Virus record (IMG/VR): IMGVR_UViG_3300037297_000066
Span: 372,001 to 436,000 of that record
Length of the DNA stretch: 64,000 nt
Reading direction: 5' to 3' (one strand)
Part shown: positions 1,683 to 21,878 of the stretch, in pieces
Position numbering within the stretch: position 1 is the first letter of the stretch
Layout: the number at the start of each line of letters is the position of its first letter
Position numbers and translations under genes: made by a program
Notes under the pieces: generated by a model
What the model was told of the DNA's origin: nothing
What the model saw: the letters and a program-made list of their open reading frames with translations, nothing else
Databases searched by the model: none

Positions 1683-2507
1683 ATGGCCTACGGGCAAGGT
1701 GAGTATGGGCAGATAGGGTACGGCGGCTCCTCTTTGGAGTCTGGCGGCCCTGCTCTGACTTTCTTTGATCCTTCAGAGGCCGAAGCCATCACTCAAGACG
1801 ACCCTTTGGAGTTCGTTGTTGAGTCTCCTGCTGAACTGGACGTCTTCAGTCTGAATCTAAGCCTGGGTGGGAAACAGGCTATCGTAGGTGGTGTGTTCCT
1901 CTCTGGGTATGAGGGGAGCATCACCTACGATCCTGAGACGAAAGTCGTCATCACCATAGAGAAACACCCTGACTTTCTGTCGAACACGGAAGTCAGCATC
2001 ACCATCACCGATCTGGCAGGGAACACAGATACCCTCGGGTACAACCTGTTGGTTCCCAATCCAATCGTTGGGCATGCAACCGTAACCGCTAGTCCAACGA
2101 TTGAGACCAGTGTTCCTGTTCGGGCCATTGTTTCGGACCCCAAGACTTTCTCGTACATGCAGAGGTTTCAACGGGGGGATCTGCCCATTCACTTCAGCAC
2201 GGCTCAGGGGTCCTATGTGCCGGCAACGGTCAGCTACACCCTCTACCAAGTCCGTGAGGATGGGACTCGGAAGCGGGTAGGGCCTCGTAACAGAGTTCCT
2301 GTGGCGGGGACCTTTGGGGAGTTCTATGTAACCGGAAGAGCTGGTGAAAGTGGACAGCCTGGGCGGTGGGTAGTCAAGTGGGAGTACCAGCGAAACTACT
2401 CATACCCCGTGGAAGAGAAAGAGATGGCATTTCAGGTCGTGGATGCAGCGACTTTGAACTGTCCTCTCGATACGACTCCACGTTGCAGAAGGTACGGGTG
2501 GAACTGA
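1683..2507 (+). CDS. Virion structural protein with GYG-rich N-terminus and Ig-like domains
   Basis: Starts MAYGQGEYGQIGYGG; Ig-like ITDLAGN motif; C-terminal domain resembles the N-terminal domain of 2906..3799. Confidence 0.55.
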   Translation: MAYGQGEYGQIGYGGSSLESGGPALTFFDPSEAEAITQDDPLEFVVESPAELDVFSLNLSLGGKQAIVGGVFLSGYEGSITYDPETKVVITIEKHPDFLSNTEVSITITDLAGNTDTLGYNLLVPNPIVGHATVTASPTIETSVPVRAIVSDPKTFSYMQRFQRGDLPIHFSTAQGSYVPATVSYTLYQVREDGTRKRVGPRNRVPVAGTFGEFYVTGRAGESGQPGRWVVKWEYQRNYSYPVEEKEMAFQVVDAATLNCPLDTTPRCRRYGWN

Positions 2508-2902
2508 TGGATAACCTCTCCAAGCGAATCGCATTTCGTTACCAGGAGGCCAACAGCCCCCTCAACCAAGACTTCTGGATGTCTCAAGACGACATACGGG
2601 AGCTCTGCCCAGCCTGTGCTGACCGGATGGCTTCGTTGAACATCCGACAGGTCAGGGCCTCGGTCTTCTTCTCCAATGCCTCTGAGCTGGCAGGTCTGAA
2701 GACAGCCAAAGGGTGGAAGTCTCTTCCCAAAGGGTGGACTCAAGACTCTCTCAAGAGCATGTGGGAGACCATCACTGGGGACGTGAAGCACAAAGTCACG
2801 AAGTGCATCAAGAAGATGGAGGGCAAGGTCGATGACCCTGGGGCCTTCTGCGCTTCGTTGGCTGACAAGATGGAGCCTGGGTGGAGAAGCCGTAGGGACT
2901 AA
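2507..2902 (+). CDS. Small Cys-containing protein, candidate head-internal protein
   Basis: Start more likely the ATG at 2507 (TGATG coupling) than 2366. Motifs KRIAFRYQEA, CPAC and CIKKMEGKVDDPGAFCA. Confidence 0.5.
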   Translation: MDNLSKRIAFRYQEANSPLNQDFWMSQDDIRELCPACADRMASLNIRQVRASVFFSNASELAGLKTAKGWKSLPKGWTQDSLKSMWETITGDVKHKVTKCIKKMEGKVDDPGAFCASLADKMEPGWRSRRD

Positions 2903-2905
2903 TCG

Positions 2906-3799
2906 ATGTCAGTCGCATTCTACAGAGGGCAACAGCTGGGTTGTGAAGACCTGAACATCTACCTGGAGAACGCCTCTGGGACTCCTACCAATGCGGCCGA
3001 GATCTGGTACTCCCTTCACGATGTGACCACGGGGCAAGAGGTGTTGTTGGGGGTTCCTCGTCGATCTCCTGTCAACCCTTCCGTGGGGCACTACTACGCT
3101 AGTGTGATCATCCCTCTTGATGCGAACATTGGGAACTACCGGGTGAGGTGGTTCTTCCGGGAAACGGTGGGGGGTCCCATTCACGAAGTGGTCCAGGAAT
3201 TCTCGGTCATCGACAAGGCAACGTGTCCTACCACTTCCTACACGGATTGTGAGACGGACATGATTCGTAGGTTGAGGATTCTGCTCCGAGACAACAATCC
3301 TGACCGAAACTACCATTTCAGACCCCCTACCCACGAAGCCACGATCAACCAGTACAACCAGGTCTTCGGATTCATTTGGGAGGATGAGGAGCTTCAGGAG
3401 TACCTGGCTAGGGGCATGGACATGATCATTGCTGCCCCGCCCAGGACTCCCTTCGCTTCCTGTGATCAGCTGGTGCAGTGTCGCCCTGAGTGGAGGACTC
3501 TCCTACTCAATGGGGCTATGATCCATGCTCTCTTGGCCTTGCAGATCAACTGGATTGCTGACGAATTCGACTACAGCATCGGGGGCGTGAGTCTGACCAT
3601 CGACAAGTCGAGCAAGTACGAGAGCGCCTACAACAGTGTCAAAGACATGTTCAATGACCAGTTGGAAAAGGCCAAAAGCACGGTCAAGATCGTTCGAGGA
3701 CTGCAGCAGCCTCGCTACGGTATCGGAATTCGCTCGTCTTTCGGCCCTTACACAGGTCGGGGTGTGTTGAGTCCTCGAAAGTTTGTAGGTTTCGGTTGA
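2906..3799 (+). CDS. Putative head-tail adaptor (neck protein 1) with N-terminal Ig-like domain
   Basis: Helical connector-like core (IRRLRILLRD...WEDEELQEYL...YSIGGVSL) and position upstream of terminator and sheath. Confidence 0.55.
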   Translation: MSVAFYRGQQLGCEDLNIYLENASGTPTNAAEIWYSLHDVTTGQEVLLGVPRRSPVNPSVGHYYASVIIPLDANIGNYRVRWFFRETVGGPIHEVVQEFSVIDKATCPTTSYTDCETDMIRRLRILLRDNNPDRNYHFRPPTHEATINQYNQVFGFIWEDEELQEYLARGMDMIIAAPPRTPFASCDQLVQCRPEWRTLLLNGAMIHALLALQINWIADEFDYSIGGVSLTIDKSSKYESAYNSVKDMFNDQLEKAKSTVKIVRGLQQPRYGIGIRSSFGPYTGRGVLSPRKFVGFG

Positions 3800-3831
3800 T
3801 ACCTAACCCCTTTGTGGGGTAAGGCTTTCGT

Positions 3832-4167
3832 ATGCCCGATGAGTCCAAGAAGAAACTGACTGTCAAAGATCCTGTTCCTAAGGAAGTGCTGGTTGTGTTG
3901 GAGCAGCTGGCTAAGGCTCGGGGGTCCTTGGCTGACCAGCTACTGGAGATGGAGCAGCGGAGGATCACTTTTTTGGCAGCTGCCAAAAGGGTTGAAGACC
4001 AGCGGAAAGCAGTTTTCGAGGAGATCTTGACTTCCCGAGGGCTGGCTCCCGGGACCCCTGTTAACATCTCCAGCTCGACTGGTGAGATCACTCTGACGAG
4101 CCCTCCTGAGGGAGGTCATCCAGAGGAAACGTCTTCGGAGGAAACGCCTTCGGAGAAAACGCGCTGA
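3832..4167 (+). CDS. Hypothetical coiled-coil protein
   Basis: 111 aa with heptad-like centre and acidic tail. Confidence 0.5.
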   Translation: MPDESKKKLTVKDPVPKEVLVVLEQLAKARGSLADQLLEMEQRRITFLAAAKRVEDQRKAVFEEILTSRGLAPGTPVNISSSTGEITLTSPPEGGHPEETSSEETPSEKTR

Positions 4168-4205
4168 GTGAGCTTTCCTTTTTTGGATTCCCTTGAGGGG
4201 AATCC

Positions 4206-5582
4206 ATGCCCTACGCTACTCAGCGAGACAGAGATCCGCACCAGCTGGAAATTGAGAGCTCCCCTTACCCGGTCTCTCCGTTGAATTTGTCCATGACTTC
4301 TGGCTACGAGCCGGGGGTCATCAATTTGACGTGGGATGACGCGGCCCAACTGTTTCAGAATTCTCGGTTTCAGATCATCGGGGTCAACGTTTGGAGGTCT
4401 TTCGACAGCGAGTTCGGTCCTTACGATCGGGTCACGACCTTGCCGGTGGGATCTAATTTCTGGCAGGACCGTACAGACAACGTGCTGATTCCAGCTGAGG
4501 ATGTTTCGGATTCGTTCATCCTCAGAGGAGTTAACTCGACCGGATCGGACTACGGTAGGTACGTATTTCAGACCCAGTATCCTATCGTGAAGGCAGGTTC
4601 CCAGGCGATACCGGCAAACAGTCCTGATGATGTGTTGGTGATGGTGGATGGGGTCCAGGCTCGGGTAAAGCGAGTTGATGGGTTCGCCAAAGAAGTCGAG
4701 CTGGATACCACCAAATACTACAACACCGAGAAGCAGAACCAGGATACCCCTGTCTATCCGGGGGACAACAGCGTGGTCACCTGTGCCTATCGGTACAACC
4801 GAACGCTTCTGAAGACAGACCTAGCACAAAGGGTCTTCTACAGAGTTACCACGGTAGGTCTTCCTGAGGCTTCTGATCTGTCGGCCGCTTGTTGTGAGGA
4901 TCTTCGGGAGACGCCTTTGGAGCGGGCTCCTGTGACCAGCACCTCAGAGATTGAGAAGCTGGACTACATCTGGAGGGAAGGTATTCGACGCAATCGTTGG
5001 ATTCTGTTCCAGGGGGGCGAGCGAGTGAAGGTCTTCATCAAGAAGCATGTAGGGCCTATTTGCCCATGCCGAGGTCCTCACTACGAGAGTTTTCATCAGC
5101 CCAAGAATGATTGCGAGCTGTGTTTTGGGGCGGGTATTTTGGGAGGGTATGAAGGCCCCTACGATATCATCATTGCTCCTGACGATGCTGAGCGTAGGAT
5201 TGCTCAACGGGACGTTGGTCGAACCGTGGAACATACCTACGAGGTCTGGACGGGTCCTTCCCCTCTCCTAAGCCAGAGAGACTTCTTGGTTAAGATCAAC
5301 GGGGAGCGCTACTCAATTGGAGCCGTACGGTTTCCGTCCAATCGAGGAATGGTGTTGCAGCAGCATTTCAATATCAGCCGTTTGGACGAACAGGACATTC
5401 GTTACAGGGTCCGGGTAACGGCTCCTTGTGGGGTGTCTGCCAACGTGGCGGGAGTTGGTCGAGCTCTTCCTGGCATACCTCCTGGCAGTAATGCGTCTGT
5501 CCCCCTCACTGAGAAGTGCAACATTCCTAATGAGCGTGAGATCAGAGGCCGCACTGTGACCTGGAAGAACATCACGTTCTGA
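4206..5582 (+). CDS. Putative head-closure protein (neck 2) with FN3-like N-terminus and CxC...CxxC Zn site
   Basis: FN3-like INLTWD/GVNVWRS/FYRVTTV; C-terminal GERVKVF...CPC...CELCFGAG...DFLVKINGERYSI beta-barrel pattern; synteny. Confidence 0.55.
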   Translation: MPYATQRDRDPHQLEIESSPYPVSPLNLSMTSGYEPGVINLTWDDAAQLFQNSRFQIIGVNVWRSFDSEFGPYDRVTTLPVGSNFWQDRTDNVLIPAEDVSDSFILRGVNSTGSDYGRYVFQTQYPIVKAGSQAIPANSPDDVLVMVDGVQARVKRVDGFAKEVELDTTKYYNTEKQNQDTPVYPGDNSVVTCAYRYNRTLLKTDLAQRVFYRVTTVGLPEASDLSAACCEDLRETPLERAPVTSTSEIEKLDYIWREGIRRNRWILFQGGERVKVFIKKHVGPICPCRGPHYESFHQPKNDCELCFGAGILGGYEGPYDIIIAPDDAERRIAQRDVGRTVEHTYEVWTGPSPLLSQRDFLVKINGERYSIGAVRFPSNRGMVLQQHFNISRLDEQDIRYRVRVTAPCGVSANVAGVGRALPGIPPGSNASVPLTEKCNIPNEREIRGRTVTWKNITF

Positions 5583-5588
5583 TTACCT

Positions 5589-6101: not shown

Positions 6102-6102
6102 A

Positions 6103-6654: not shown

Positions 6655-6689
6655 TTCTTTTGATAGCGTTGGAATGACAGAGGTACGTT

Positions 6690-7382
6690 ATGGATCCCAA
6701 ATGGAAGGCTGTTTCCGTCCCTACCAGCAAGACGGCTTGTTCCTGTGACTCTGGAAAAGCTAAATGGCCTTCCAGTTTGGAGGCAGTGTGGCAGAATCCC
6801 ACTGCTTACGACGCTTTGGAGGACGGCCCTTCCTACATGCCCACGAAGACAGCCAGTACAACGGATCGGGCGGCTGTAGCCCGAATGGTTCAGGCCAATA
6901 CGTACGCTGGGCAAAAGTTGGCTGACGAGGTGGGGGGAACCAGGTTAGTATCTCTGCTGACGGTCATGAAGGCTTTGTACCTGATCCACCAGACTCATCA
7001 CTGGAGGACCAACGGGGCGTCCTACTATGCGGACCATTTGTTGTTCCAGCGGATCTACGAAGAGTCTCTGGAGTACATCGATGGGATGGCAGAGCGGGCT
7101 ATAGGGACGTCAAACAACCCTTGGGTGATCTGTCCTATGAAGTTGGCCAAAGGTCAGCTCAATGTCGTACACTTCTTCTGTGAGGGCAATTCTCAACCGA
7201 GCCCTGAGCAAATGGTCAACATCAGCCTCAAAGCGGAGCTGGCTTTCTTGGCTTTTCTGAAGCAGGTTGTAGAGGCTATGAGGCAAGAGGGAAGCTCGAC
7301 GGATGGCGTTGAGGACCTGATTCAGGGAACCGCCAGTAAGCATGAAGAGTTCGTTTACCTGCTGCAGCAGCGGTCCAGGTAA
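6690..7382 (+). CDS. dps: Dps/ferritin-like protein with N-terminal extension
   Basis: HQTHHW...G..YYADHLLFQRIYEE....IDGMAER matches the Dps ferroxidase signature. Confidence 0.75.
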   Translation: MDPKWKAVSVPTSKTACSCDSGKAKWPSSLEAVWQNPTAYDALEDGPSYMPTKTASTTDRAAVARMVQANTYAGQKLADEVGGTRLVSLLTVMKALYLIHQTHHWRTNGASYYADHLLFQRIYEESLEYIDGMAERAIGTSNNPWVICPMKLAKGQLNVVHFFCEGNSQPSPEQMVNISLKAELAFLAFLKQVVEAMRQEGSSTDGVEDLIQGTASKHEEFVYLLQQRSR

Positions 7383-7417: not shown

Positions 7418-8428
7418 ATGAGCAAGAAAGAAGAAGGGCTTACTCTTGGGGTAGGTCTAGACATCGGGACCATGAACCTTGTAGGGGCCCGGGAGGTGGA
7501 AGGCAAGACCGTCTTCACACAGGTACGGGACGCCTTTCTGGACCTTGATCCGGAAGCGAAACGATCTCTCAAGATGTCGGGAGTGAACTTTCTGGAGAGC
7601 AACGGGTCCTTGGTGGTGGTTGGGGACAGTGCCTTGACCATGGCCAACCTTTTCAAGAGGGAGGCTCGTCGTCCTTTGAGTCGAGGGGTGATCTCGGCTG
7701 GGGAACTGGATGCTCAAGAGATCTTGAACGTCTTGTTGCTTGAAGTGGTGGAGCAGGCCCGGGAAGAGGGGGAGCACTGCTTCTACTCAGTTCCTGCGCC
7801 GCCTCTTGATGATCCAGGTCAAGACATCATTTTCCACACTGAGATCTTTCGTAAGATCATCAGGGGGCACAAGTACACGGCGCATCCAGCCAACGAGGCG
7901 ATGGCCATCATCTTCAGCCAGTGCGTTGAGGAGCAGTTCTCGGGTTTGGCGGTGAGTTTCGGGGCCGGGATGTGCAACGTGGCCTTGGCCTACAAGGCTG
8001 CTTCTGGAATGGAATTTTCCTTGGCTCGGGGAGGAGACTGGGTGGATTCTCAGTCGGCCCGAGCGGTGGGCAAGACTGCTAGTCAGATGTGTGCCATCAA
8101 GGAAAAGGGAGTGAACCTGGCTCAACCTCAAGGTAGAGAACAGGAGGCTCTGGCTCTCTACATTCGCTCTTTGATCAACTACTGTCTCCAGAACATCGTT
8201 GCTCAGTTCAAGAAGGTTCGAAACGATGTGTCGTTGCCTGATCCGATCCCCTTTATCGTTTCGGGAGGATCTTCGATGGCCGGCGGGTTCTTGGAGTTGT
8301 TCAAGGATGAGTTCCAGCAGGTCAAAGGGTTCCCCATCGAAATCAGTGAGATTCGAGCAGCCGCCGATCCCATGACAGCCGTGGCCGAGGGGTTGTTGGT
8401 GCTCGCCAAGCAGGAACACGAAGAGTAG
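7418..8428 (+). CDS. Actin-fold ATPase, volactin/salactin-like
   Basis: Phosphate-1 GLDIGTMN, connect NEAMA, phosphate-2 VSFGAGMCN, ARGGDWVD, adenosine VSGGSS, connect-2 DPMTAVAEG. Confidence 0.9.
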   Translation: MSKKEEGLTLGVGLDIGTMNLVGAREVEGKTVFTQVRDAFLDLDPEAKRSLKMSGVNFLESNGSLVVVGDSALTMANLFKREARRPLSRGVISAGELDAQEILNVLLLEVVEQAREEGEHCFYSVPAPPLDDPGQDIIFHTEIFRKIIRGHKYTAHPANEAMAIIFSQCVEEQFSGLAVSFGAGMCNVALAYKAASGMEFSLARGGDWVDSQSARAVGKTASQMCAIKEKGVNLAQPQGREQEALALYIRSLINYCLQNIVAQFKKVRNDVSLPDPIPFIVSGGSSMAGGFLELFKDEFQQVKGFPIEISEIRAAADPMTAVAEGLLVLAKQEHEE

Positions 8429-8429: not shown

Positions 8430-9605
8430 GTGTACTACTTTCTCACCAACTCCCTTAGGAACCGTTTGATTCTGGAGCTGCAGGATTCGTTTTCGAAGCA
8501 TGCTCTCTACAAAAAGATCGTTCCTAACATCCAGAACAAGTACGCCTTCAAAGAGCGGCCTCAGTTTGGGGTAGTGGTCAAGGGAGCCAGCGGAAACAAA
8601 ATCCAGCTCTCGGCGGACAACTTCATTGGGGAAGTACTGAGCCATGTCATGCTGGCGTATGTGGGGGAACATCAGTTTCCCTTGGAGTGGGTGAGAGAGG
8701 ACCTGAATAGAGTTAGGGCAGCAGGAGGTTTCCCTTCTCCTCCGGGGATCTACTATATCGAGGTTCTTCAGGCTCCAACCAATCCGACAGAGCCTGGGTT
8801 TTTCGCTATCGACCCTCTTTACACGCAGCCTGATGAAGCGGTTCTGGTTTTCCAGTCGGGAATTGAGAAAGAGGCCCAGCTTCAGAACGTACCCGTTCAG
8901 GACACTGTGCGGATCTGGGAGAACAACAAGCGGCTTCTCATCGAGGGAACGGACTACATCGTCAATTATGAGACGGGGGCGGTGGCTGTCTTGCAGTCGT
9001 TCCCTCCTGGGACTACTTGGATTGCTCAATACCGTTATGCTGGGGAGTCCCAAGGTCCTATTCCCTTCTACTGGAACAGGGCGGACTTCGAGAGCATTCC
9101 GGGGGTGGTACTGGCTTTTGGAAAGAGAGCTGTTGAGGGGGATACGGTGGCTGTGGTTGTCTACCAGGATAGGGTAGGCACAGCCAAGGCTTATGGAGGG
9201 CAATTCGAAGCCTCTTTTGATTTGGATGTTATGGCTCGTGATACCGAGCAGGTGGGGGAAATCGCCGACATGATCTTCATGTACCTCATGGCGGAGAAGC
9301 GTCCGATTCTGAGTGAAGAAGGTCTAGAGATCATGGACGTCTCTATGGGGGGTGAGGCTGAAGAAGTGATGGATGAGAGTGGAGACAACTACTCCTATAC
9401 CGTTTCCATGTCGGTACAGATCCAGTCGGTGTGGGAAATTCATATTCCGCAACCTCTCACCATCAGCAGAGCTACTCCTGTGACAGCTGCGGGGGATTCC
9501 GATCCTTCTCAACCTTCAGGACTTGTGGCCAGGGCGGACAAGCTGTTTTTCCAGACCACCCCCATTCTGGCCAACAGAAATCCAGATTACGAACGCATCG
9601 GATGA
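8430..9605 (+). CDS. Putative tail terminator/completion protein with inserted beta domain
   Basis: GTG start; C-terminal SFDLDVMARD...IADMI...YTVSMSVQIQSVW resembles terminator folds; lies just upstream of the sheath. Confidence 0.55.
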   Translation: MYYFLTNSLRNRLILELQDSFSKHALYKKIVPNIQNKYAFKERPQFGVVVKGASGNKIQLSADNFIGEVLSHVMLAYVGEHQFPLEWVREDLNRVRAAGGFPSPPGIYYIEVLQAPTNPTEPGFFAIDPLYTQPDEAVLVFQSGIEKEAQLQNVPVQDTVRIWENNKRLLIEGTDYIVNYETGAVAVLQSFPPGTTWIAQYRYAGESQGPIPFYWNRADFESIPGVVLAFGKRAVEGDTVAVVVYQDRVGTAKAYGGQFEASFDLDVMARDTEQVGEIADMIFMYLMAEKRPILSEEGLEIMDVSMGGEAEEVMDESGDNYSYTVSMSVQIQSVWEIHIPQPLTISRATPVTAAGDSDPSQPSGLVARADKLFFQTTPILANRNPDYERIG

Positions 9606-9608: not shown

Positions 9609-10043
9609 ATGCCCAAGTACACTTTCGAGTGTGATTCCTGCAACGTTAGGTTCACTCGGACTCTCAAAATGGGAGAACACCTGACCTGCGCCTGTCCCAA
9701 GTGCAGAGAGCAGGTTCCTAGGTTTTGGGATGGACAGGGGTTTTCCTTCGATTTTGCCGAGGGAGGGAAGGCCCCGGCAAACAGTGGGGTGACCAAGCAC
9801 GATTATCCGACGGCGGACCAGGCTGTGGGAAGGTCCGCCGACAAACGGTGGGCAGAGTACCGAGAGCGGGAAAAGGTGAAAGAAAAGGTTCGGGAGAGGG
9901 GGGGTTCCAGAGCCTTGAATCGGACAGACTCCCCGGAAATAAACGGAAATCGTAGCTATATCCAGTACACAGCCATAGGAGAAAAGGAGCTCCAGGGACG
10001 TCGGGAAGTGGTGGGTAAGCTTAAGCAGCTAGAGCCTCGATAA
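9609..10043 (+). CDS. FmdB-like zinc-ribbon protein
   Basis: MPKYTFECDSC...F...CPKC signature. Confidence 0.75.
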   Translation: MPKYTFECDSCNVRFTRTLKMGEHLTCACPKCREQVPRFWDGQGFSFDFAEGGKAPANSGVTKHDYPTADQAVGRSADKRWAEYREREKVKEKVRERGGSRALNRTDSPEINGNRSYIQYTAIGEKELQGRREVVGKLKQLEPR

Positions 10044-14595: not shown

Positions 14596-17500
14596 ATGGA
14601 GATGGACGCCTCTACCGATTACGACTTCCGTGTTCAGGCAGCTCAGGACGAGGACATCAGCGAGCTAGAGGCCGCTGAGTACATCGTTTTCAACTTGGCT
14701 CTGGATACCTATTTCCGGTACATCGAAGAGGTCACAGGGGAGGAGCCCCCAGAGGATGACGAGAATACTCTGGATGAGGCCCCCGAGGGTGACACCACGA
14801 AGTTGGATTCTCTGGCTTCGGATGGCATTCGACTCTTGAAGCGAGTGGATAGCCGATTCCAAGAAGATGCGGTGTCCATGCTGGATACCAACCTGCCCTC
14901 TGAGACCCACAAGAAGATGCTTCAGAGGGCGTTTCGGCGCCCAGCCAGGTCAAGGGACGCTATCTCTCGTCGAGCTCTCTTGATGCGAACTGTGCTCTCC
15001 AGAGGAGGGCACAAGACCGTCAAAGCGGTCTTCCACAAAACTCGACCCCTTCGTGCTGTCAAAGATGCCTTGGCAGATGCCATGATGGAGGATGCAGGGC
15101 CGGCTTTGCAGAGATTTGCAGCGGTACCGATTCGGAATCCTCGGATCAAGGCTTGGATCAAGGCAGCAGCTTCCGTTACCAGGGAAAGGGATCAGCCCAA
15201 TGCTGCTCCTCTCAACCCCGTGGAGGTGGCCTCTTCGGTAGGTGCCGATCATGCGGAGGCACTTCGGAAGGACACTGTTGACGAAACAGGTCTCCAAGGG
15301 GCGGAAGAGCAAGCCGTTGCTGGGGATGAAAGGGAGAACAGGATTTCCGACATCGAGTCGGAGGCTGCCGAAGCTGCCGCTGAGGTTCTGGCTGATGCCG
15401 GTGAGCCCGATGAGGTTTTGACTCGTAGTGAGGTCATTGGCATTGCTACCGCTGCAGCGGTGGCAGCTTCTACCGACCCTACCGACCCTACCAACATCCC
15501 AGAGCCTCTTAAGCGTCTAGATGACGAGCAGAGAGCAGCGGCCATGACTGACGGCAAGGTCTTGGTGGCGGCAGGGGCCGGGTCTGGAAAGAGCTGGACT
15601 TTGGTGGCCCGGGTCGAGCATCTCATCAAGGATCGAGGCGTCAATCCTGCCAGGTGTCTAGTCACTTCCTTCAACAAGAAGGCCGCTCTAGAGCTCGACT
15701 ACAAGATCGGCAATGTCATTGGTGGGGACATGGCTGACGCTATGTCTATTGGGACCCTTCACGGGTTGTTCCGGCAGTTCATCGACAAGTATGGGACTCA
15801 GGAAGAGCGTATCGCTGTGGGGGTTGATAGGAAAGGTCCCAACGGGTTCGTGAAGGGAGGCGATTCTGTTGCTTCGGCTGTCAACCGGGTGTGGCGCAAG
15901 TGCTATGCCACCCAGAAGGCTGATGGGACGTGGAAGGATGCTGACGCTCCTAGGGTCAAGGATGGAATGCGTGCCAAGACCCAGTGGGCTGGAAACAACG
16001 TGACTCCTGCCCAGGCCATAGAGAAAGCGGCCACGCCAGAAGAGGCTCAGCTGGCTCAGTGGTATGAGTGGTACATGGGTTTCAAAGGGGACCTGGGGAA
16101 GGATTGGGAACCCCCTTGTGGTCGAAAGCTCAGGGAGTGGGAAGGGTTCCTAGCAAAGAAGCGTCTTGGGGGAAGGATTCGTCTTGGAGACTTCGACGAC
16201 ATGTTGGGTATCTTCAAAGACATCCTCAAGAGACAACCGGAAGTGAAGGCCACTGTCCAGGCGGCCTTCGACCACATTTTGGTTGACGAGTGTCAGGATC
16301 TTAATGAGACCCAGAATGAAATTATCATGATGATGTCCGAACACATCACTGATGGTTCTGATGGAAAGTCTCTTTGGATGGTGGGCGACGATAAGCAGTG
16401 CGTGGGTGTAGACACGCCTGTCCAGGTTTCAGCAACCGAGACTGTGCCCGCGGGGGAGCTTCAAGCGGGTGCCACTGTGTTGGCTTACCGCAATGGCAAA
16501 TTGCGTCCCCAGAAGGTGTTGCACGCCAAACATTCCGATTGGCGCACTGGGTACAAGGTCACTACGGAAAGCGGTAAGACGCTTACTATGTCTCCCAACC
16601 ACAAGATTTGGGCACAAGGTCCCGTTCTTGAGGAAAGGCAAGTAGCCGTCTACCTTATGTATCGTCAGGACAAGGGCTTCCGGGTTGGGATCACCAACAA
16701 GTGCCACGACGAGGATTACTACAACTCGTTTGGGGGTCGAGCCTTCATGGAGAAGGCCGAGCGTATGTGGGTTCTTACCGTATGCCAAGACCGTGAAGAA
16801 GCCTTGTTGAAGGAGGCTTCCTACTCTTTGGAATACGGTGTGCCTACGGCAGTGTTCGAGGGGGCCAGCAGGGGTATCAACCAGGATCGGTTGGATGCCT
16901 TGTTTGAGACTTTTGGACATAACGGTAGGAAACTGCTGGCTGAAAAGACTCTGGGTTTTGACCTTCCCCACTGGGTTAGCCAATCTTACACGAAGCATGG
17001 GCGTCTCCGTAGAACCGTGCAGATGACGGCTCATGGATCAAAGGGAAGCCAGGTTGCTTTGGAGTGGTCTGGGGATGACCTGGACGGGAAGTTGGAAGGC
17101 ATCCAGTTCTCCAAGCAAGCTAATGGGCGTCGCCGTCTCCGCAAATGGTTCACCAATTATCGAGAGGCTCTTGAGTTCGCTGAGCAGGTGGCAGAAAGGA
17201 CTGGAGCTGCGTTGTCTCGGCGTTTGTCTACTCCTGAAGGGCCTGTGCGGTTGCTCACTGCTTCTGGGTTGTTCTCTGGAATGCAAGTGGTTGTTAGGGA
17301 CGATGAGGATCCCGAAGCCGTTGCTTTGGAAACCATCGTGTCGGTGGAACCCGTTTCCGAGACGGCCTTCGTGGATCTGGACGTGGAAGATGCTTCCAAC
17401 TTCGTCGGAGGCGGTATTCTTTCCCACAACAGTATCTACGCCTTCCGTGGAGCTCGTCCTGATCTGTTCACCGCCCTGGATGGTAAGGAAGGCTGGAAGA

Positions 17501-19014
17501 CCCGATCCATTCGAACCAACTACCGCTGCCCCCCTGAGATTGTCGAGGCCGCCAACCTTCTCATTGCGAACAACGAGGACCAGATCCCCATGGAGGCCAC
17601 CCCCAATCCAGCTCGGATTCGAGGGATGGCAAGCATGCGGGTAGAGCAGATGCAGGACTGTGAAGGTACGGCTATCTTGGCAGCCAACACCATCAAATCC
17701 GCTCTTGATGGGGACAGTTGCGAGATCTCTGACAATGCGGTCCTGTGCCGTACCAATGCCGAATTGAACATGTTCGAGACGGCGTTGCTGCTTCGAGGCA
17801 TCCCGTACGCTCGCAAAGGAGCCAGCAGCTTCCTTGGGTCTCCAGAAACGGCGGCCTTCTTGGGCTACATCAAGATGGTTTCAGGGGGCACTGACTTTGA
17901 GGGGCAGCAGAAGGCTCTTCGATCTATTCTCAACACGCCGAATCGGTTCTTCGTAGCCCCTGATGCAGCCAAAGCTGCTGTAGACCAGGCGCTTAGAGAG
18001 TACGCTTCAATGGAAAGGATGCCTATCAAGAACGTGGACCCGATGGAAGCCTTGGGTGATGATCGGTTCCGGCGTTCTTTGGCACATGCCTTGACCAAGA
18101 TTGACCGTCCTCGTAGCCGGCGAGAAGAGTTCAAGCTGAGCAAGACGGTCGAGAAGTTAGATGCTTTCTGGGAAGAGGTAGCGGATTTGAGAGAGACCGC
18201 TCAAGCCGAGGAGACCACAACTCACCAATTGTTCGACGCCGTTCTCAGTGTCTCAGGAATCGAGTTGGAGGTGGATCCTAACACGGGAAGGATCACGGGA
18301 GAGAAGCCGGTTACTTTCCGAGAAGCCGTTTCCAACAACTTGAAGGACCAGGGTGGGGAGGACGATGACGCAGGGGCTGAGGATGAAGACAGCTCCATGC
18401 AAGGGTTGGGGAACATTTCCTTCCTCTACGAGCTGGCCAAGCCTGATCCGAATGACCCTGCAGACAAGGCAGCCGATCCTCGAACTCCCTTTGGATTCCG
18501 AGCCAAGATGGAACGAATCAAGGAGCGGGCAAAGGAGCTTCGCTACGACATCACGGCTTGGGACAAGCAACAAGAGGCCAAGCCTCCTGAAGAGCGACAG
18601 CCGCCTCCTGGGGTGTACCTTGGGACCGTGCACTCCACGAAAGGTGCACAGTGGAAGAACACCTTTGTTCAGATGCCCGCTGGCAAGTTCCCTTTCCAGC
18701 CGCCTGCCAAGCCTGGGTCTGAGCCGCCTCCCCCAGAGGTGATCGAGAAGGAGATGCAGCAGGAGCGAAGGCTGGGCTATGTGGCGATCACTCGGGCTAT
18801 CGACAACCTGACCATTCTCTGTCCAAACGAGGTCAACGGGAAGCCTGCAGGGGTTAGTCCTTTCGTAGCCGAAGCGGGGCTACACCTTGGGGAAAACATC
18901 GGAGCAGAGCCCACCTCTCCTGAAGAAGAGCCTCCTGGAGAGCCTTCAAAGGAGGCTTCCGATGATTCGGGTTCGGATTGGGATGGTTACGAAGCTGACT
19001 ACGAGAGGTCCTAG
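14596..19014 (+). CDS. uvrD: SF1A UvrD/PcrA-like helicase with intein and acidic N-terminal extension
   Basis: AGAGSGKS, SFNKKAA, GTLHG, DECQD, VGDDKQ|SIYAFRGA, TNYRC, TVHSTKG, ERRLGYVAITRA. Confidence 0.93.
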   Translation: MEMDASTDYDFRVQAAQDEDISELEAAEYIVFNLALDTYFRYIEEVTGEEPPEDDENTLDEAPEGDTTKLDSLASDGIRLLKRVDSRFQEDAVSMLDTNLPSETHKKMLQRAFRRPARSRDAISRRALLMRTVLSRGGHKTVKAVFHKTRPLRAVKDALADAMMEDAGPALQRFAAVPIRNPRIKAWIKAAASVTRERDQPNAAPLNPVEVASSVGADHAEALRKDTVDETGLQGAEEQAVAGDERENRISDIESEAAEAAAEVLADAGEPDEVLTRSEVIGIATAAAVAASTDPTDPTNIPEPLKRLDDEQRAAAMTDGKVLVAAGAGSGKSWTLVARVEHLIKDRGVNPARCLVTSFNKKAALELDYKIGNVIGGDMADAMSIGTLHGLFRQFIDKYGTQEERIAVGVDRKGPNGFVKGGDSVASAVNRVWRKCYATQKADGTWKDADAPRVKDGMRAKTQWAGNNVTPAQAIEKAATPEEAQLAQWYEWYMGFKGDLGKDWEPPCGRKLREWEGFLAKKRLGGRIRLGDFDDMLGIFKDILKRQPEVKATVQAAFDHILVDECQDLNETQNEIIMMMSEHITDGSDGKSLWMVGDDKQCVGVDTPVQVSATETVPAGELQAGATVLAYRNGKLRPQKVLHAKHSDWRTGYKVTTESGKTLTMSPNHKIWAQGPVLEERQVAVYLMYRQDKGFRVGITNKCHDEDYYNSFGGRAFMEKAERMWVLTVCQDREEALLKEASYSLEYGVPTAVFEGASRGINQDRLDALFETFGHNGRKLLAEKTLGFDLPHWVSQSYTKHGRLRRTVQMTAHGSKGSQVALEWSGDDLDGKLEGIQFSKQANGRRRLRKWFTNYREALEFAEQVAERTGAALSRRLSTPEGPVRLLTASGLFSGMQVVVRDDEDPEAVALETIVSVEPVSETAFVDLDVEDASNFVGGGILSHNSIYAFRGARPDLFTALDGKEGWKTRSIRTNYRCPPEIVEAANLLIANNEDQIPMEATPNPARIRGMASMRVEQMQDCEGTAILAANTIKSALDGDSCEISDNAVLCRTNAELNMFETALLLRGIPYARKGASSFLGSPETAAFLGYIKMVSGGTDFEGQQKALRSILNTPNRFFVAPDAAKAAVDQALREYASMERMPIKNVDPMEALGDDRFRRSLAHALTKIDRPRSRREEFKLSKTVEKLDAFWEEVADLRETAQAEETTTHQLFDAVLSVSGIELEVDPNTGRITGEKPVTFREAVSNNLKDQGGEDDDAGAEDEDSSMQGLGNISFLYELAKPDPNDPADKAADPRTPFGFRAKMERIKERAKELRYDITAWDKQQEAKPPEERQPPPGVYLGTVHSTKGAQWKNTFVQMPAGKFPFQPPAKPGSEPPPPEVIEKEMQQERRLGYVAITRAIDNLTILCPNEVNGKPAGVSPFVAEAGLHLGENIGAEPTSPEEEPPGEPSKEASDDSGSDWDGYEADYERS
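16399..17430 (+). mobile_element. Intein (344 aa) in helicase motif III, with GIY-YIG-like insert
   Basis: Starts CVGVDTPV, block B SPNHKIW, ends DLDVEDASNFVGGGILSHN followed by Ser; removal restores VGDDKQSIYAFRGA. Confidence 0.93.
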
Positions 19015-19016
19015 AC

Positions 19017-19961
19017 ATGGCTGCTCAGTACACTGAGATCACGTTGGAGGATATGGATCGCTTTTTTAAGCGAGCCTATCGAGCTTTGCGACCACGTCGA
19101 GACCTTGATCGTGGGGAGTATGTCTACACTCTCAAGCTCAGTAAGAACGTAGGTATTCGGGTCTACTCATCCATCACAAAGGAAGGAACGGGAGCTGGGG
19201 TAGGCAGTGATGCCATTCGAGTTGTCTTGTACGGGACTCGGGTTCGAAGACCTTTGGTCAAGGGGAAGGCGCCCATCGTCAAGCGCACCCAGGGATGGAG
19301 GAACAGCCTTCAGAAGCAGATTGAACAGGCCATCGAGACCTACGACGAGAAGGAAAGCTACTGGGAGGAACGAGCTGGGGGTCCGAGTCCTGAGGAGCGT
19401 GAAGAGTCTCGTCAGAAAGAAGGCAAGCCCACGCTTCGGATCGAGCCTCGACTGAAGGTCAAGCCTCTGATCCTAGCCATCCTGGAAGAGGTTGGGGGGC
19501 CTGATGACGCCATCAGTGTGTTCACAGACAGCGAGAACGTGAACACAGTGGTTGTTCTTGCCAAAGAAAGCGCTTCCCCTTCGGAGTTGATTCACTCCTT
19601 GAGCAAAGCGTTCGTGGCGAAAGGTATCAAGCCTAAGCAAACCAGGGGGAAAGTGGTTTTGCTAGACTACGATGACGTGGCTGGTTCAGACACGGCCCCG
19701 GCTCCGAAGTTGCCTCCCACAGACAAGCAGATTCGGTTCGCTCTCAAGCTGCTCAAGAAGGTCAGCGACGACAACTGGTACGACCATAGCTGGAACCAGA
19801 AGTACAAGATCCCTACGGTTCCCGACGAAGAACAACTGCGTGGGATGGAGCGGCGCCAGGTCAGTGCTCTCATTGACGACTTGCTGAAGAACGGGTTCGG
19901 CTACTACAGAAACGCTTCTACTTTGGATTTGGAATACCCTGAATACGACCAGTTGATGTAG
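19017..19961 (+). CDS. Multi-domain hypothetical protein
   Basis: N-terminal IRVYSSI...GSDAIRV...RTQGWR domain; C-terminal PTDKQIRF...VSALIDDL helical module. Confidence 0.6.
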   Translation: MAAQYTEITLEDMDRFFKRAYRALRPRRDLDRGEYVYTLKLSKNVGIRVYSSITKEGTGAGVGSDAIRVVLYGTRVRRPLVKGKAPIVKRTQGWRNSLQKQIEQAIETYDEKESYWEERAGGPSPEEREESRQKEGKPTLRIEPRLKVKPLILAILEEVGGPDDAISVFTDSENVNTVVVLAKESASPSELIHSLSKAFVAKGIKPKQTRGKVVLLDYDDVAGSDTAPAPKLPPTDKQIRFALKLLKKVSDDNWYDHSWNQKYKIPTVPDEEQLRGMERRQVSALIDDLLKNGFGYYRNASTLDLEYPEYDQLM

Positions 19962-19970
19962 ACTGAGGGT

Positions 19971-20798
19971 ATGCCGGACCTAGAGCTGCAGGTCGTCGTA
20001 AACGAAGATCTTCCGTACGAGTTGGAGTCCGGGGTCGCTTTTGGGGACTTCGAGGTTCGTGAAGGGGTTGTTTACGACGGGGGCCCTGAAAGCCTGCTTC
20101 AGCTTTACCGGAATCTCCTGGTGGGGAGAGCTCACGGCCTAACTCTCTACACTCGGAAGATCCCTTGGGTGTCGAGTCTGGTTGCCATCGCCTTGTTCTT
20201 GAGGAGGGACCTGGCAGTGCATCCCAAGATGGCACAGTTTGTGATGTCGGCCGACCTGGCTAGCACCTACGGAGCGGCTGGGTTAGCCCATGTGGAGCCC
20301 GACGTGTGTTCCTTCTTGAGACTCCTGAGGGACTACGTGGTGGACCAAAAGCTCGGAAAACCAGAGTTGGGCCGGAGACTTCATCAAGCGGTCGAGTGGA
20401 TCGGGGAGTACATTTTGGAGGACCGTCTTCCGAACCTTCGGCCTGACCCAGAACCTCCTCAGGTATTGGATGTGGGCACAGATGGGTTCGTAACGGCGCT
20501 GTCTTCCAGGCCGGAAATCACCCAAGATGATTGGATCCCTCTCTATCGGCAAGGTTTCTTGCGTGGGGTACTCTTCACTCCTCCCGAGAATGACTTCAGA
20601 GGGTACCTAGCTTCCCGCAAGAGCTCTTGGCTGACCTTCGACCTGCCCAAGGCCGCTGTTTGGCTAAACGAGGCTGAGAAGGCTCTGAGGGGCCTGGCCG
20701 GTCCGCTTTGGGAAGCGGATGGGGATTGGCTTTGGGGCCCGGAGCCTGGGACACTCCTTCCTCCTTCCTCCGTTTTGGATGTTCTGACCAGGGTCTAG
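19971..20798 (+). CDS. Hypothetical protein, possibly a degenerate DHH-like fold
   Basis: 275-aa ORF with GAGG Shine-Dalgarno; no intact catalytic motif recognised. Confidence 0.45.
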   Translation: MPDLELQVVVNEDLPYELESGVAFGDFEVREGVVYDGGPESLLQLYRNLLVGRAHGLTLYTRKIPWVSSLVAIALFLRRDLAVHPKMAQFVMSADLASTYGAAGLAHVEPDVCSFLRLLRDYVVDQKLGKPELGRRLHQAVEWIGEYILEDRLPNLRPDPEPPQVLDVGTDGFVTALSSRPEITQDDWIPLYRQGFLRGVLFTPPENDFRGYLASRKSSWLTFDLPKAAVWLNEAEKALRGLAGPLWEADGDWLWGPEPGTLLPPSSVLDVLTRV

Positions 20799-20831
20799 CG
20801 ATAGAGTTTTCGTGCCCATGTCTCTGTAGGC

Positions 20832-21878
20832 ATGCCTGCACGAGTTTTAGTCACCCTCGGAACGGATGGGATCACCAACTGGGTTCAGGCCCCGAACGGT
20901 CGAAAACTGAGTTTGGGGACCATTGCTCCTGTCAAGTTCGTAGTGGAATTGGCTTCCAACGCTAGGGCGGCTCGGCAGGCTCTGGATGGCTTTGTTCGGG
21001 ATGGGGAGGGGATGCTGAGTGTGGATCTTCAGGGGATGTTGGATTTGCTCACACCTAGACGCACTCGATGGGCCACGGATGCTTTTATTCCCTCTGATCT
21101 ACAACAGATGGAGAAGTCTAGCCTGGACCTACAGTGGGTCGATTTGTTCCTCTCAAAGGCAGAGGGACAGGTGCAGAAGTTGTCTTCGGAACCCGGAGAC
21201 CCTTCTGAACTGGAGACCCTCAACAAGTCTGTCCAGGCTCTTTGCCATCCAGAGCAGGTTTCCTTTGAGGGAAGGCTGACTGCCATCGAAGCGTGTCTTG
21301 AGAAGGTTCCTTTGTCGGAGGAGAGGGTAGCTACCTTGAGATATTTGGTAGCGAGTCTTCAAACTCCTAAGGCCGCCGTTGAGTTGGCCGAAAGCATTCT
21401 AGCTGAGGTTCGAGAGACGAATGCTCGGATTGATTCCCTGGTCGAGCAAGGAAAGCGTTTCAGTTCGGTCAAAGCCAAAACTGAACTGGCCAAGGTGGTC
21501 AATGCTGTGGCCGGCATTGCTACTCATGATGTGACGGTTCCAGAAGTTCGAGAGGAGCTGAATGCAACGGCCTGTCGAGCAGACGAGTTGCACCGTCTCT
21601 TTTTCAGCAAGAGTGCAGCTCTTCGTCCGGGAGCAGCCACTCAACTTGAGTCAGCTCTCAACAAACTCCTCCGAAAGTTCCGTGGTGTGAAGGTGTCCTT
21701 GGATTTTCGTACCCGAGGCAAGAAGCAGGAGCCTTACATCACAGTTGCTATGCCGAGCCGAGATTGGTTTGAGAACACCTTGGCTCGTGACTTGGACGCT
21801 TTGGGGGACTTCAATTCTCTAGTTGGCTCCTATGGGGCTGAGTACAAGCTGACCGGACAAGAGATCATCATCCAATGA
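20832..21878 (+). CDS. Hypothetical helical protein, candidate head-internal protein
   Basis: 348 aa; contains RWAT, RVAT and KSAA motifs. Confidence 0.55.
   Translation: MPARVLVTLGTDGITNWVQAPNGRKLSLGTIAPVKFVVELASNARAARQALDGFVRDGEGMLSVDLQGMLDLLTPRRTRWATDAFIPSDLQQMEKSSLDLQWVDLFLSKAEGQVQKLSSEPGDPSELETLNKSVQALCHPEQVSFEGRLTAIEACLEKVPLSEERVATLRYLVASLQTPKAAVELAESILAEVRETNARIDSLVEQGKRFSSVKAKTELAKVVNAVAGIATHDVTVPEVREELNATACRADELHRLFFSKSAALRPGAATQLESALNKLLRKFRGVKVSLDFRTRGKKQEPYITVAMPSRDWFENTLARDLDALGDFNSLVGSYGAEYKLTGQEIIIQ

What the first reader, a model, noticed from the sequence alone, without database searches (positions are those of the whole stretch)
2507..21878. Recurring K/R-x-A motifs mark the non-tail proteins: possible head-packaged, protease-processed cargo
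Seen, mostly near termini or domain boundaries: 2507 (KRIAFRYQEA-N, QVRA-S, LKTA-K), Dps (SKTA-C, TKTA-S, VARMVQA-N just before the ferritin core), helicase (FRVQA-A at the N-terminus, SKEA-S at the C-terminus), 19017 (YRNA-S) and 20832 (RWA-T, RVA-T, SKSA-A). Established: T4 and phiKZ prohead proteases trim internal head proteins at short motifs ending in Glu. Inference: an Ala-ending equivalent here, meaning the virion may carry a helicase and a Dps. The motif is short and could be chance.
Basis: inference. Interest (0 to 1): 0.6.

Follow-up and report, generated by a model that had tools for sequence, protein, structure and literature searches.

The report
Ala-ending protease motif, unproven cargo
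The short K/R-x-Ala strings seen in a giant phage's Dps, helicase and neighbouring proteins occur at about chance level and are not conserved. The same motif is a real, conserved signal in the phage's scaffold and head-maturation protease outside the window, where it probably marks the cleavage site.

Summary
The window is part of a complete 437-kb phage-G-like megaphage.

**The observation.**
- In the five named proteins the motif occurs 41 times against 33 expected from composition (p about 0.08-0.26).
- It shows no bias towards the termini.
- It is almost never conserved in orthologues.

**The region.** Bases 2507-21878 are not a non-tail block. They are the neck-tail operon, containing the sheath, a terminator-like gene and an actin-like gene, with the tube gene next. 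Into this operon are inserted the 2507 ORF, a Dps-like miniferritin, and a cassette of a UvrD helicase (with intein) plus three ORFs. The close relative LR745208.1 has neither the Dps gene nor the helicase cassette at these sites.

**The motif elsewhere.**
- K/R-x-A is 2-3.5 times enriched in the scaffold candidates of seven relatives, and also in Tunturi_5, phage G and Myrna. Control arrangements of the same residues are not enriched.
- Ser is favoured at the position after the Ala.
- The motif is near-invariant at two predicted-disordered sites flanking the catalytic core of the head protease in 120 homologues.
- That protease has the T4 gp21 / herpesvirus assemblin fold, and assemblins cut Ala|Ser.

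**Verdict.** An Ala-ending cleavage motif is plausible. Cargo status for the Dps and helicase is unsupported.

The parts
2507..2902 (+). Small four-Cys ORF (131 aa), an accessory gene
   Evidence: Homologues are present in only 2 of 5 related contigs at this position (L007, L009). The Cys pattern CPxC...C...C is conserved. No family match.
2906..3799 (+). Conserved virion-module protein (297 aa)
   Evidence: 75-77% identical in relatives. Weak PHROG hit to head-tail connector. It contains no [KR].A at all.
4206..5582 (+). Virion structural or minor tail protein (458 aa)
   Evidence: PHROG virion structural protein. Homologue of Tunturi_5 gp322, annotated minor tail protein. Kept in LR745208.1.
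6690..7382 (+). Dps-like miniferritin with an N-terminal extension of about 85 aa; an accessory insertion
   Evidence: Pfam Ferritin and PHROG 3636. Best solved relatives are Dps proteins, e.g. 1JIG, E = 2e-8, over residues 94-225. H104, H116, D131 and E135 align with conserved Dps residues. The extension motif is conserved in about 45 homologues. Absent from this position in LR745208.1.
7418..8428 (+). Actin-fold ATPase of the Volactin family, part of the conserved core
   Evidence: Pfam Volactin, E = 5e-69. One base separates it from the next gene. The adjacency is kept in five relatives and in LR745208.1.
8430..9605 (+). Tail-terminator-like neck/tail protein (391 aa)
   Evidence: Homologue of Tunturi_5 gp324, annotated tail terminator.
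9609..10043 (+). Zinc-ribbon protein (144 aa)
   Evidence: Pfam Zn_ribbon_8, below the curated cut-off. Syntenic in all relatives.
10164..14423 (+). Tail sheath (1419 aa)
   Evidence: tblastn matches annotated tail sheath genes of Tunturi_5 and more than 200 cluster-C mycobacteriophages. The Pfam sheath models do not match.
14596..19014 (+). UvrD/PcrA-type superfamily-1 helicase (1472 aa) with a 300-aa N-terminal extension; first gene of an inserted cassette
   Evidence: Pfam UvrD-helicase 7e-40 and UvrD_C 1e-21; PHROG DNA helicase 3e-78. Lies between sheath and tube only in this subclade.
16399..17430 (+). Intein (344 aa) in helicase motif III
   Evidence: Pfam Intein_splicing. Junctions are GDDKQ|C and SHN|S. 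Homologues in L021 and L022 lack it.
19017..19961 (+). Cassette ORF (314 aa), function unknown
   Evidence: Only residues 1-130 are conserved. No family or Atlas hit.
19971..20798 (+). Cassette ORF (275 aa), function unknown
   Evidence: Syntenic in six relatives. No family hit.
20832..21878 (+). Cassette ORF (348 aa): small alpha/beta domain, helical middle, extra C-terminal domain
   Evidence: AF2 model, pLDDT 70. No informative fold match. Family-level [KR].A is 1.8 times expectation. Not detected in LR745208.1.
21908..22630 (+). Tail tube protein (240 aa), marks the end of the inserted cassette
   Evidence: Homologue of Tunturi_5 gp329 and of phage G gp180. gp180 is called tail tube subunit 2 and was found in particles in PMC12484599.

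Best explanation
Bases 2507-21878 are the neck-to-tail part of the late morphogenesis operon of a 437-kb phage-G-like megaphage.

Its conserved core is the 2906 and 4206 proteins, an actin-like ATPase, a terminator-like protein, a zinc-ribbon protein and the tail sheath, with the tail tube gene directly downstream (21908-22630). Accessory genes are inserted into this core:
- a small Cys-rich ORF (2507);
- a Dps-like miniferritin;
- a cassette of a UvrD-type helicase (carrying an intein) plus three ORFs.

These accessory genes are probably co-expressed late (inferred from gene spacing only). They most likely act on phage DNA or iron in the cell (inferred).

The K/R-x-A strings in them are chance-level occurrences. 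The motif itself is real elsewhere. K/R-x-A, preferably followed by Ser or Ala, is a conserved short linear motif of the lineage's scaffold and of its gp21/assemblin-fold head-maturation protease. It is most likely the site that this protease cuts. That step is inferred, not shown.
For: **Map of the region**
- The genome is complete with terminal repeats. The head module (terminase, portal, protease, scaffold candidate, MCP) lies 19-32 kb upstream of the window.
- Sheath, terminator-like and tube assignments come from homology to annotated genes.
- LR745208.1 (MCP 83% identical) has sheath and tube 740 nt apart. It has no Dps gene before the actin gene, and its UvrD gene is elsewhere on the other strand.

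**Chance level in the window**.

**Motif real in head proteins**
- Scaffold candidates of seven relatives: 8-15 sites against 2.8-6.0 expected, each p = 0.015 to below 0.00025. Five control arrangements of the same residues are at or below expectation.
- Tunturi_5 gp332: 20 against 7.8. Phage G gp19 protease: 10 against 3.4. Phage G gp21: 8 against 4.0. Myrna gp97 protease fusion: 31 against 15.4.
- The scaffold candidate is the top-ranked of 545 proteins in this genome.
- Ser follows the Ala in 13 of 64 independent sites against a 6% background, p = 1e-4.
- In 120 protease homologues, K5-x-A7 is kept in 119 and [KR]289-A-A291 in about 114-117, next to variable sequence.
- Four of the five conserved flanking sites lie in low-confidence, probably disordered segments of the model (1-17, 32-45, 267-282, 291-313); the fifth, K365-E-A, starts a helix just after 345-359.
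- Protease fold: T4 gp21, Z = 8.6, followed by 29 herpesvirus protease entries at Z = 5.7-7.9, then unrelated folds.
Against: - No cleavage has been observed. The motif could serve another role.
- Proteins with a single site would escape every enrichment test.
- [KR].AS occurs 6 times against 2.0 expected in the five proteins.
- The 20832 family is 1.8 times enriched.
- Many Dps homologues have K/R-x-A-S/T just after the invariant GPPY[LM]P motif, and [KR]-x-A-C-G-C near the N-terminus.
- Phage G particle proteomics lists a ferritin-like protein (gp346) and helicase ps201, which by my inference from the paper's ps/gp numbering (ps202 = gp300) is gp299. gp299 is the best phage G match to this helicase. 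However, that data set also found 55% of all nucleic-acid-metabolism proteins in the particles.
- The Pfam protease families S77 and S78 do not match.
Confidence: 0.6

Rival explanations
1. One reading: the Dps, the helicase and the 2507, 19017 and 20832 proteins are packed into the head and trimmed by the prohead protease at the quoted K/R-x-A sites.
For: - The motif class does look like the protease's site.
- [KR].AS occurs 6 times against 2.0 expected in the five.
- TKTA|S and YRNA|S resemble the conserved scaffold site [RK]-[TN]-A-S.
- The genes lie in a tightly spaced late operon.
- Phage G particle proteomics lists a ferritin-like protein and helicases.
Against: - The quoted sites are not conserved.
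- There is no family-level enrichment for the helicase, 19017 or 2507, and the Dps enrichment is unspecific.
- The genes are indel cassettes in the tail part of the operon. At these sites LR745208.1 lacks the Dps gene and the helicase cassette; the 2507 ORF is present in only 2 of 5 related contigs.
- No shared targeting peptide was found.
- The helicase carries an intein and looks like an ordinary DNA-metabolism enzyme.
Confidence: 0.1
2. Only the Dps-like protein is loaded into the capsid. Its conserved N-terminal extension would act as a targeting peptide that is then removed at K-x-A|S, much as encapsulins load ferritin-like cargo.
For: - An 85-aa extension with the invariant motif VW.DP..YD...HGPPY[LM]P is present in about 45 homologues.
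- It is followed by [KRV]-[LT]-A-[ST], and a [KR]-x-A-C-G-C motif lies near the N-terminus in about a third.
- A ferritin-like protein is reported in phage G particles.
Against: - The position three residues before the cut is Val, not Lys or Arg, in the largest subgroup, whereas it is Lys or Arg in 117-119 of 120 of the protease's own sites.
- The gene is not in the head module and is elsewhere in LR745208.1.
- The Cys-rich extension could equally bind metal or DNA.
- No binding test was run.
Confidence: 0.12
3. The K/R-x-A excess in scaffold and protease is not a cleavage site. It would instead be a compositional or helical-periodicity effect, or a binding motif.
For: - Scaffold candidates are low-complexity Q/E/K/A-rich helices, and one carries tandem repeats that add three or four copies.
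- No proteolysis data exist.
- Ser after the Ala is not enriched in Myrna.
Against: - Five control arrangements of the same residues are not enriched in the same proteins.
- The Ser preference is independent of the search pattern.
- The motif turns over at new positions in non-homologous middle regions.
- It is near-invariant inside otherwise variable, disordered flanks of the protease.
Confidence: 0.25

Closest known systems
T4 gp21 prohead protease with (L/I)-x-E sites, and phiKZ gp175 / SPN3US gp245 with A-x-E sites
   Same: - Same fold: 5JBL, Z = 8.6, rmsd 3.2 A over 127 residues.
- A three-residue motif that recurs many times in scaffold or core proteins and flanks the protease's own catalytic domain. 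SPN3US cleavages follow AXE, gp245 cleaves itself, and apart from its self-cleavage all identified gp245 cleavages give N-terminal propeptides (PMC10052503).
   Different: - The residue before the cut would be Ala, not Glu, and Lys or Arg lies two residues further back.
- The Pfam S77 model does not match.
- No experimental cleavage data exist.
Herpesvirus assemblin (maturational protease), which cuts (V/L/I)-x-A|S
   Same: Same fold: 29 entries at Z = 5.7-7.9. Ala before the cut and Ser after it (my own knowledge of assemblin specificity, compared).
   Different: Here the position three residues before the cut is basic rather than aliphatic. Sequence identity is only 7-12%. The host is a bacterium.
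T4 internal proteins and phiKZ inner-body proteins (packaged, N-terminally trimmed cargo)
   Same: The sites would lie near termini.
   Different: Those genes lie with the head genes and have conserved propeptides. Here the candidates are indel cassettes among tail genes and their sites are not conserved.
Bacterial Dps miniferritins (e.g. Bacillus anthracis Dlp-2, 1JIG)
   Same: Four-helix core. The residues aligning with the ferroxidase ligands are kept.
   Different: A phage-specific 85-aa N-terminal extension with Cys and GPPYLP motifs.
Encapsulin ferritin-like cargo
   Same: A ferritin-type protein next to an HK97-fold shell system; a terminal peptide could target it.
   Different: No targeting interaction was shown or tested. 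The extension is N-terminal and long.

Membership tests
Prohead (capsid maturation) serine protease, T4 gp21 / HK97 gp4 / assemblin fold | Assemblin-like fold of the catalytic domain | tested here: met
   AF2 core residues 50-260 are confident. The top match is T4 gp21 (Z = 8.6), then 29 herpesvirus protease entries, then a drop to unrelated folds. Foldseek alone is weak, E = 0.018.
Prohead (capsid maturation) serine protease, T4 gp21 / HK97 gp4 / assemblin fold | Gene lies between portal and major capsid protein, next to a scaffold gene | tested here: met
   The order portal, 1079-aa protein, 235-aa protein, protease, scaffold candidate, 207-aa protein, MCP is seen here and in six relatives.
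Prohead (capsid maturation) serine protease, T4 gp21 / HK97 gp4 / assemblin fold | Conserved catalytic Ser and His | tested here: inconclusive
   H56, H127, S62, S134 and S178 are invariant in 117 sequences. Which of them are catalytic was not established.
Prohead (capsid maturation) serine protease, T4 gp21 / HK97 gp4 / assemblin fold | Match to curated family models (Pfam S77, S78) | tested here: not met
   No match in the genome. Only PHROG 18299, head maturation protease, at 3e-10.
Prohead (capsid maturation) serine protease, T4 gp21 / HK97 gp4 / assemblin fold | Cleaves scaffold, itself or capsid proteins at a defined motif | not testable with these tools
   Only indirect evidence: motif enrichment and conservation.
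Head-packaged, protease-trimmed cargo (T4 internal-protein / phiKZ inner-body type) | Conserved cleavage site that delimits a propeptide | tested here: not met
There is no stand-out site in 57 helicase N-termini. Dps is ambiguous.
Head-packaged, protease-trimmed cargo (T4 internal-protein / phiKZ inner-body type) | Gene belongs to the head-assembly gene set | tested here: not met
   The genes lie between neck, sheath and tube genes, and at these sites LR745208.1 lacks both the Dps gene and the helicase cassette.
Head-packaged, protease-trimmed cargo (T4 internal-protein / phiKZ inner-body type) | Protein present in purified virions | not testable with these tools
   The only data are a loose particle proteome of distant phage G.
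Dps (DNA-binding ferritin-like protein) | Ferritin-like four-helix domain with Dps ferroxidase ligands | tested here: met
   Pfam Ferritin scores 24.6 against a cut-off of 24.5. There are 26 Dps chains with E below 0.01. HW104, H116, D131 and E135 are conserved.
UvrD/Rep/PcrA superfamily-1 helicase | UvrD N- and C-terminal helicase domains | tested here: met
   Pfam 6.8e-40 and 1.1e-21.

The most novel reading that the evidence does not exclude
Phage-G-like megaphages mature their heads with an assemblin-fold protease that cuts after K/R-x-Ala, preferably before Ser, which would be a bacterial-virus counterpart of the herpesvirus Ala|Ser specificity. In the window's subclade the protease would also trim and release a Dps-like miniferritin loaded into the capsid through its conserved N-terminal extension, making the phage head act like an encapsulin with ferritin cargo.
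Probability: 0.1. Interest if true: 0.8.

Novelty: new variant of a known kind. Interest (0 to 1): 0.45.

Why it matters
If K/R-x-A(S) is the cleavage motif, the processed head proteins of a large and almost entirely uncultivated megaphage clade could be predicted from sequence. More than 1,295 protease homologues were found, on contigs of up to 536 kb. It would also add a specificity link between phage and herpesvirus maturation proteases beyond their shared fold.

The idea is directly testable. Phage G and Tunturi_5 grow in culture, and phage G particle mass-spectrometry data already exist.

The negative result also matters. Lying next to structural genes and containing a three-residue motif is not evidence that a Dps or a helicase travels in the virion.

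Tried and rejected
- **DNA search against phages.** A megablast of 20 kb found nothing.
- **Pfam and PHROG scans.** Most window proteins stayed unnamed.
- **Pfam sheath models.** PF04984 and PF17482 do not match. The sheath call rests on tblastn to annotated genes.
- **Promoter and terminator scan.** Uninformative, with fewer sites than in shuffles.
- **Shared targeting peptide.** The Dps N-terminal motif occurs in no other protein of the genome.
- **ESM Atlas.** No usable hit for 19017 or 20832.
- **Fold of 20832.** The model gave only generic helical and designed-protein matches.
- **Protease against PDB by sequence.** No match.
- **Literature.** No report of an Ala-ending phage prohead protease motif in the searched library. 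The Gonzalez 2020 phage G structure paper is not held.
- **Coiled-coil periodicity.** Considered as the cause of the scaffold excess and rejected, because the mirror pattern A.[KR] and the one- and three-residue spacings are not enriched.
- **Tandem repeats.** Considered as the sole cause in the window phage's scaffold and rejected, because six relatives without that repeat show the same excess.
- **Complex prediction.** Not used. Only shallow alignments were available for the capsid protein, and no binding claim is made.
- Not used, as they have no bearing on virion content.

Full report
**What the window is**

The window is bases 372001-436000 of a single 437,331-bp virus record with direct terminal repeats, judged complete. 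All long ORFs in the window are on the + strand.

By major capsid protein (MCP) identity its nearest named relatives are:
- the uncultured 485-kb phage LR745208.1 (83%);
- Tunturiibacter phage Tunturi_5 (47%);
- Bacillus phage G (38%);
- cluster-C mycobacteriophages (about 30%).

The head module lies just upstream of the window:
- terminase, 340449-342449;
- portal, 343203-345029;
- a 1079-aa and a 235-aa protein;
- head-maturation protease, 349021-350514;
- an acidic Q-rich 473-aa scaffold candidate, 350558-351979;
- a 207-aa protein;
- a 292-aa MCP without a delta domain, 352702-353580.

**What lies in 2507-21878**

It is not.
- 10164-14423 is the tail sheath. tblastn hits annotated sheath genes of Tunturi_5 and more than 200 mycobacteriophages, although the Pfam sheath models fail.
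- 8430-9605 matches the Tunturi_5 tail terminator, and 4206-5582 matches its minor tail protein.
- 21908-22630, just after the stretch, matches Tunturi_5 gp329 and phage G gp180. The phage G multi-omics paper calls gp180 tail tube subunit 2 (PMC12484599).
- 6690-7382 is a Dps-family miniferritin. It has a Pfam Ferritin match and Dps structures as its best solved relatives, and the residues aligning with the ferroxidase ligands are kept.
- 7418-8428 is an actin-fold ATPase of the Volactin family, E = 5e-69.
- 14596-19014 is a UvrD-type helicase with a 344-residue intein in motif III.

**Synteny**

Five related IMG/VR contigs keep the whole order from 1683 to 25144, including the Dps gene, the actin gene and the helicase cassette. 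The 2507 ORF is present in only two of them.

LR745208.1 keeps only the core: 4206 homologue, actin, terminator-like gene, zinc ribbon, sheath, tube.
- It leaves 1.2 kb where the window has 5589, 6103 and the Dps gene.
- It leaves 740 nt where the window has the helicase, 19017, 19971 and 20832.
- Its Dps-like gene is about 143 kb away.
- Its UvrD-like gene is at 301-304 kb on the other strand.
- No 20832 homologue is detectable.

In phage G the best match to the helicase, gp299, lies about 105 kb from the tail genes.

In Tunturi_5, structural and replication genes are also interleaved. In this lineage, position next to virion genes says little about function.

**The observation, tested in the window**

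All 13 strings are there, but four of them are not K/R-x-A.

| Test | Result |
|---|---|
| [KR].A in the five proteins | 41 observed, 33.1 +/- 5.2 in shuffles, p = 0.08 |
| Random protein sets of equal size reaching the same ratio | 26% |
| Sites within 60 residues of a terminus | 11 against 7.7, p = 0.14 |
| Observed/expected: the five proteins | 1.23 |
| Observed/expected: whole genome | 1.09 |
| Observed/expected: tail proteins | 0.91 |

The visible contrast with tail proteins is mainly their low Lys, Arg and Ala content.

In orthologues the quoted sites are lost.
- Dps SKTA lies in an N-terminal stretch that the five syntenic homologues lack.
- TKTA is 0/5 at the aligned columns.
- Helicase FRVQA and SKEA are 0/3. 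In 57 helicase homologues FRVQA falls in a mostly gapped region.
- RVA is 0/6.
- SKSA is 1/6 and lies where the shorter homologues simply end.
- Only RWA (4/6) persists, inside a conserved block.

Family-level observed/expected ratios, with the mean of five control arrangements in brackets:
- helicase 1.09 (1.04);
- 19017, 1.03 (0.81);
- 2507, 1.25 (0.89);
- Dps 1.59 (1.42, so unspecific);
- 20832, 1.80 (1.23).

*Scaffold candidates.*
- The scaffold candidate is the most [KR].A-enriched of 545 proteins in this genome: 11 against 4.2. Part of that is a four-fold tandem repeat.
- Six further scaffold candidates from related contigs lack that repeat. Their middle regions do not align, yet they show the same excess: 8-15 sites against 2.8-6.0 expected, each p between 0.015 and below 0.00025.
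- The arrangements [KR]A, [KR]..A, A[KR], A.[KR] and A..[KR] stay at or below expectation in the same proteins.

*Independent lineages.*
- Tunturi_5 gp332, between protease and MCP: 20 against 7.8, p below 2e-4.
- Tunturi_5 gp328, annotated DNA ejection protein: 25 against 13.2.
- Phage G protease gp19: 10 against 3.4, p = 4e-4.
- Phage G gp21: 8 against 4.0.
- Myrna gp97 is an N-terminal protease domain fused to a long tail and is mis-annotated as a tape measure. It shows 31 against 15.4.
- MCPs and the Tunturi_5 sheath show no excess.

*The residue after the Ala.* Collapsing homologous columns leaves 64 roughly independent scaffold sites. Ser follows in 13 of them against a 6% background (p = 1e-4), and Ala follows in 11. 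This preference is not built into the search pattern.

*The protease itself.* A word search found more than 1,295 homologues, and the best 120 (50-79% identical) were aligned.
- K5-[YF]-A7 is kept in 119 of 120.
- [KR]289-A-A291 is kept in about 114-117 of 120, directly before a variable, gapped acidic linker.
- R38-x-A40, R280-x-A282 and K365-E-A367 are also conserved far above their flanks.
- The sites at residues 5, 38 and 280 align with K-x-A in the Tunturi_5 and phage G proteases.
- In the AlphaFold model the core (residues 50-260) is confident. The low-confidence segments are 1-17, 32-45, 267-282, 291-313 and 345-359, which is where four of these five sites lie; K365-E-A starts the helix just after 345-359.
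- The core aligns best with T4 gp21 (Z = 8.6, rmsd 3.2 A, 127 residues). Next come 29 herpesvirus protease entries (Z = 5.7-7.9), before a drop to unrelated folds. Foldseek ranks the same families first, but weakly.

*MCP and scaffold.* The MCP N-terminus carries IKTA|A and AKLA|A within its first 28 residues, conserved in Tunturi_5. The scaffold has sites conserved in all or nearly all seven relatives: [KR]-x-A|[ED]-D-P near the N-terminus, C-x-[KR]-[VL]-A, and [RK]-[TN]-A-S near the C-terminus.

**Reading**

Established:
- T4 gp21 and the phiKZ-type proteases cut after short motifs ending in Glu. These sites recur in core proteins and flank the protease itself. For SPN3US gp245 the motif is AXE, and apart from its self-cleavage all identified gp245 cleavages give N-terminal propeptides (PMC10052503).
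- Herpesvirus assemblins, which share the fold, cut (V/L/I)-x-A|S (my own knowledge).

Inference: the distribution seen here has the same pattern. The motif occurs many times in scaffolds, turns over in variable regions, is invariant in the disordered flanks of the protease, and is absent from sheath and MCP bodies. K/R-x-A, then Ser or Ala, is therefore most likely the cleavage motif. I put this at about 0.55. No report of it turned up in the searched library.

**Does this rescue the cargo idea?**

Not on present evidence.
- The scaffold-derived motif [KR].AS occurs 6 times against 2.0 expected in the five proteins (p about 0.02-0.04). Those proteins were picked because such strings were seen in them.
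- One of the six sites lies inside the intein, one lies in the conserved helicase core, and the rest are not conserved.

The Dps is the least unlikely candidate. About 45 homologues share an N-terminal extension with the invariant motif VW.DP..YD...HGPPY[LM]P, followed by [KRV]-[LT]-A-[ST]. About a third carry [KR]-x-A-C-G-C near the N-terminus.

Three points weigh against it:
- The basic residue is replaced by Val in the largest subgroup, whereas the protease's own sites keep it strictly.
- The extension could as well bind metal or DNA.
- The motif is found in no other protein of the genome.

The phage G paper reports ferritin-like gp346 and several helicases in particles. It also reports 55% of all nucleic-acid-metabolism proteins there, so the preparation is not selective.

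**Verdict**

The strings are real, but in these proteins they are no more than chance. The region is a neck-tail operon with inserted accessory genes. The Ala-ending motif is a worthwhile, testable prediction for the head proteins outside the window. Cargo status for the Dps and helicase remains speculation.

Noticed in passing
window 7418-8428: A phage-encoded actin-fold ATPase (Pfam Volactin, 5e-69) lies one base upstream of the terminator-like gene. The order actin, terminator-like, zinc ribbon, sheath is kept in five relatives and in LR745208.1. A 27% homologue exists in the 595-kb phage LR756511.1. It may have a role in tail or virion assembly, or in intracellular positioning.
   Followed up: partly
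window 16399-17430: A 344-residue intein sits in helicase motif III (GDDKQ|C ... SHN|S). Homologues in L021 and L022 lack it. The L025 homologue carries an intein at a different site (VDE|C).
   Followed up: partly
L005:1792-4019; G001:C1:68056-70833; L032:9442-10167; L033:9033-9980: Mobile elements are scattered through the structural genes of relatives. The 2906 homologue is split by 1.3 kb. One protease gene has an in-frame insert of about 410 aa. LAGLIDADG genes lie just after the MCP.
   Followed up: no
genome 350558-351979 (outside window, L002:14558-15979): The scaffold candidate has four tandem 21-aa units, GKEAAQQKQQQDQAEDQEGQE. Its Q/E-rich middle is unalignable between relatives while both ends are conserved.
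   Followed up: partly
window 6690-7382: The public gene call for this record starts the Dps at Met66 (165 aa). The conserved N-terminal extension in about 45 homologues argues for the 230-aa form. The extension holds a CxC motif and an invariant GPPY[LM]P motif of unknown role.
   Followed up: partly
L035:4701-8336 (Mycobacterium phage Myrna gp97): The gene is annotated tape measure, but it lies just before the MCP, and its residues 35-214 are a homologue of the head protease (31% identity). It looks like a protease-scaffold fusion.
   Followed up: partly
window 29571-31544: A 657-aa protein with a lysozyme/transglycosylase-like segment (PHROG baseplate hub, lytic tail protein). It points to a peptidoglycan-bearing bacterial host.
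   Followed up: no
window 53261-61006 and 38070-43925: Very large ORFs (2581 and 1951 aa) poor in Lys and Arg, probably fibre or baseplate proteins. No family match for the 1951-aa ORF; the 2581-aa ORF was not scanned against any family library.
   Followed up: no
window 8430-9605: The terminator-like protein has 7 [KR].A sites against 2.5 expected, and 1.95 times expectation across its family. Only two or three of the sites are conserved. The significance is unclear.
   Followed up: partly
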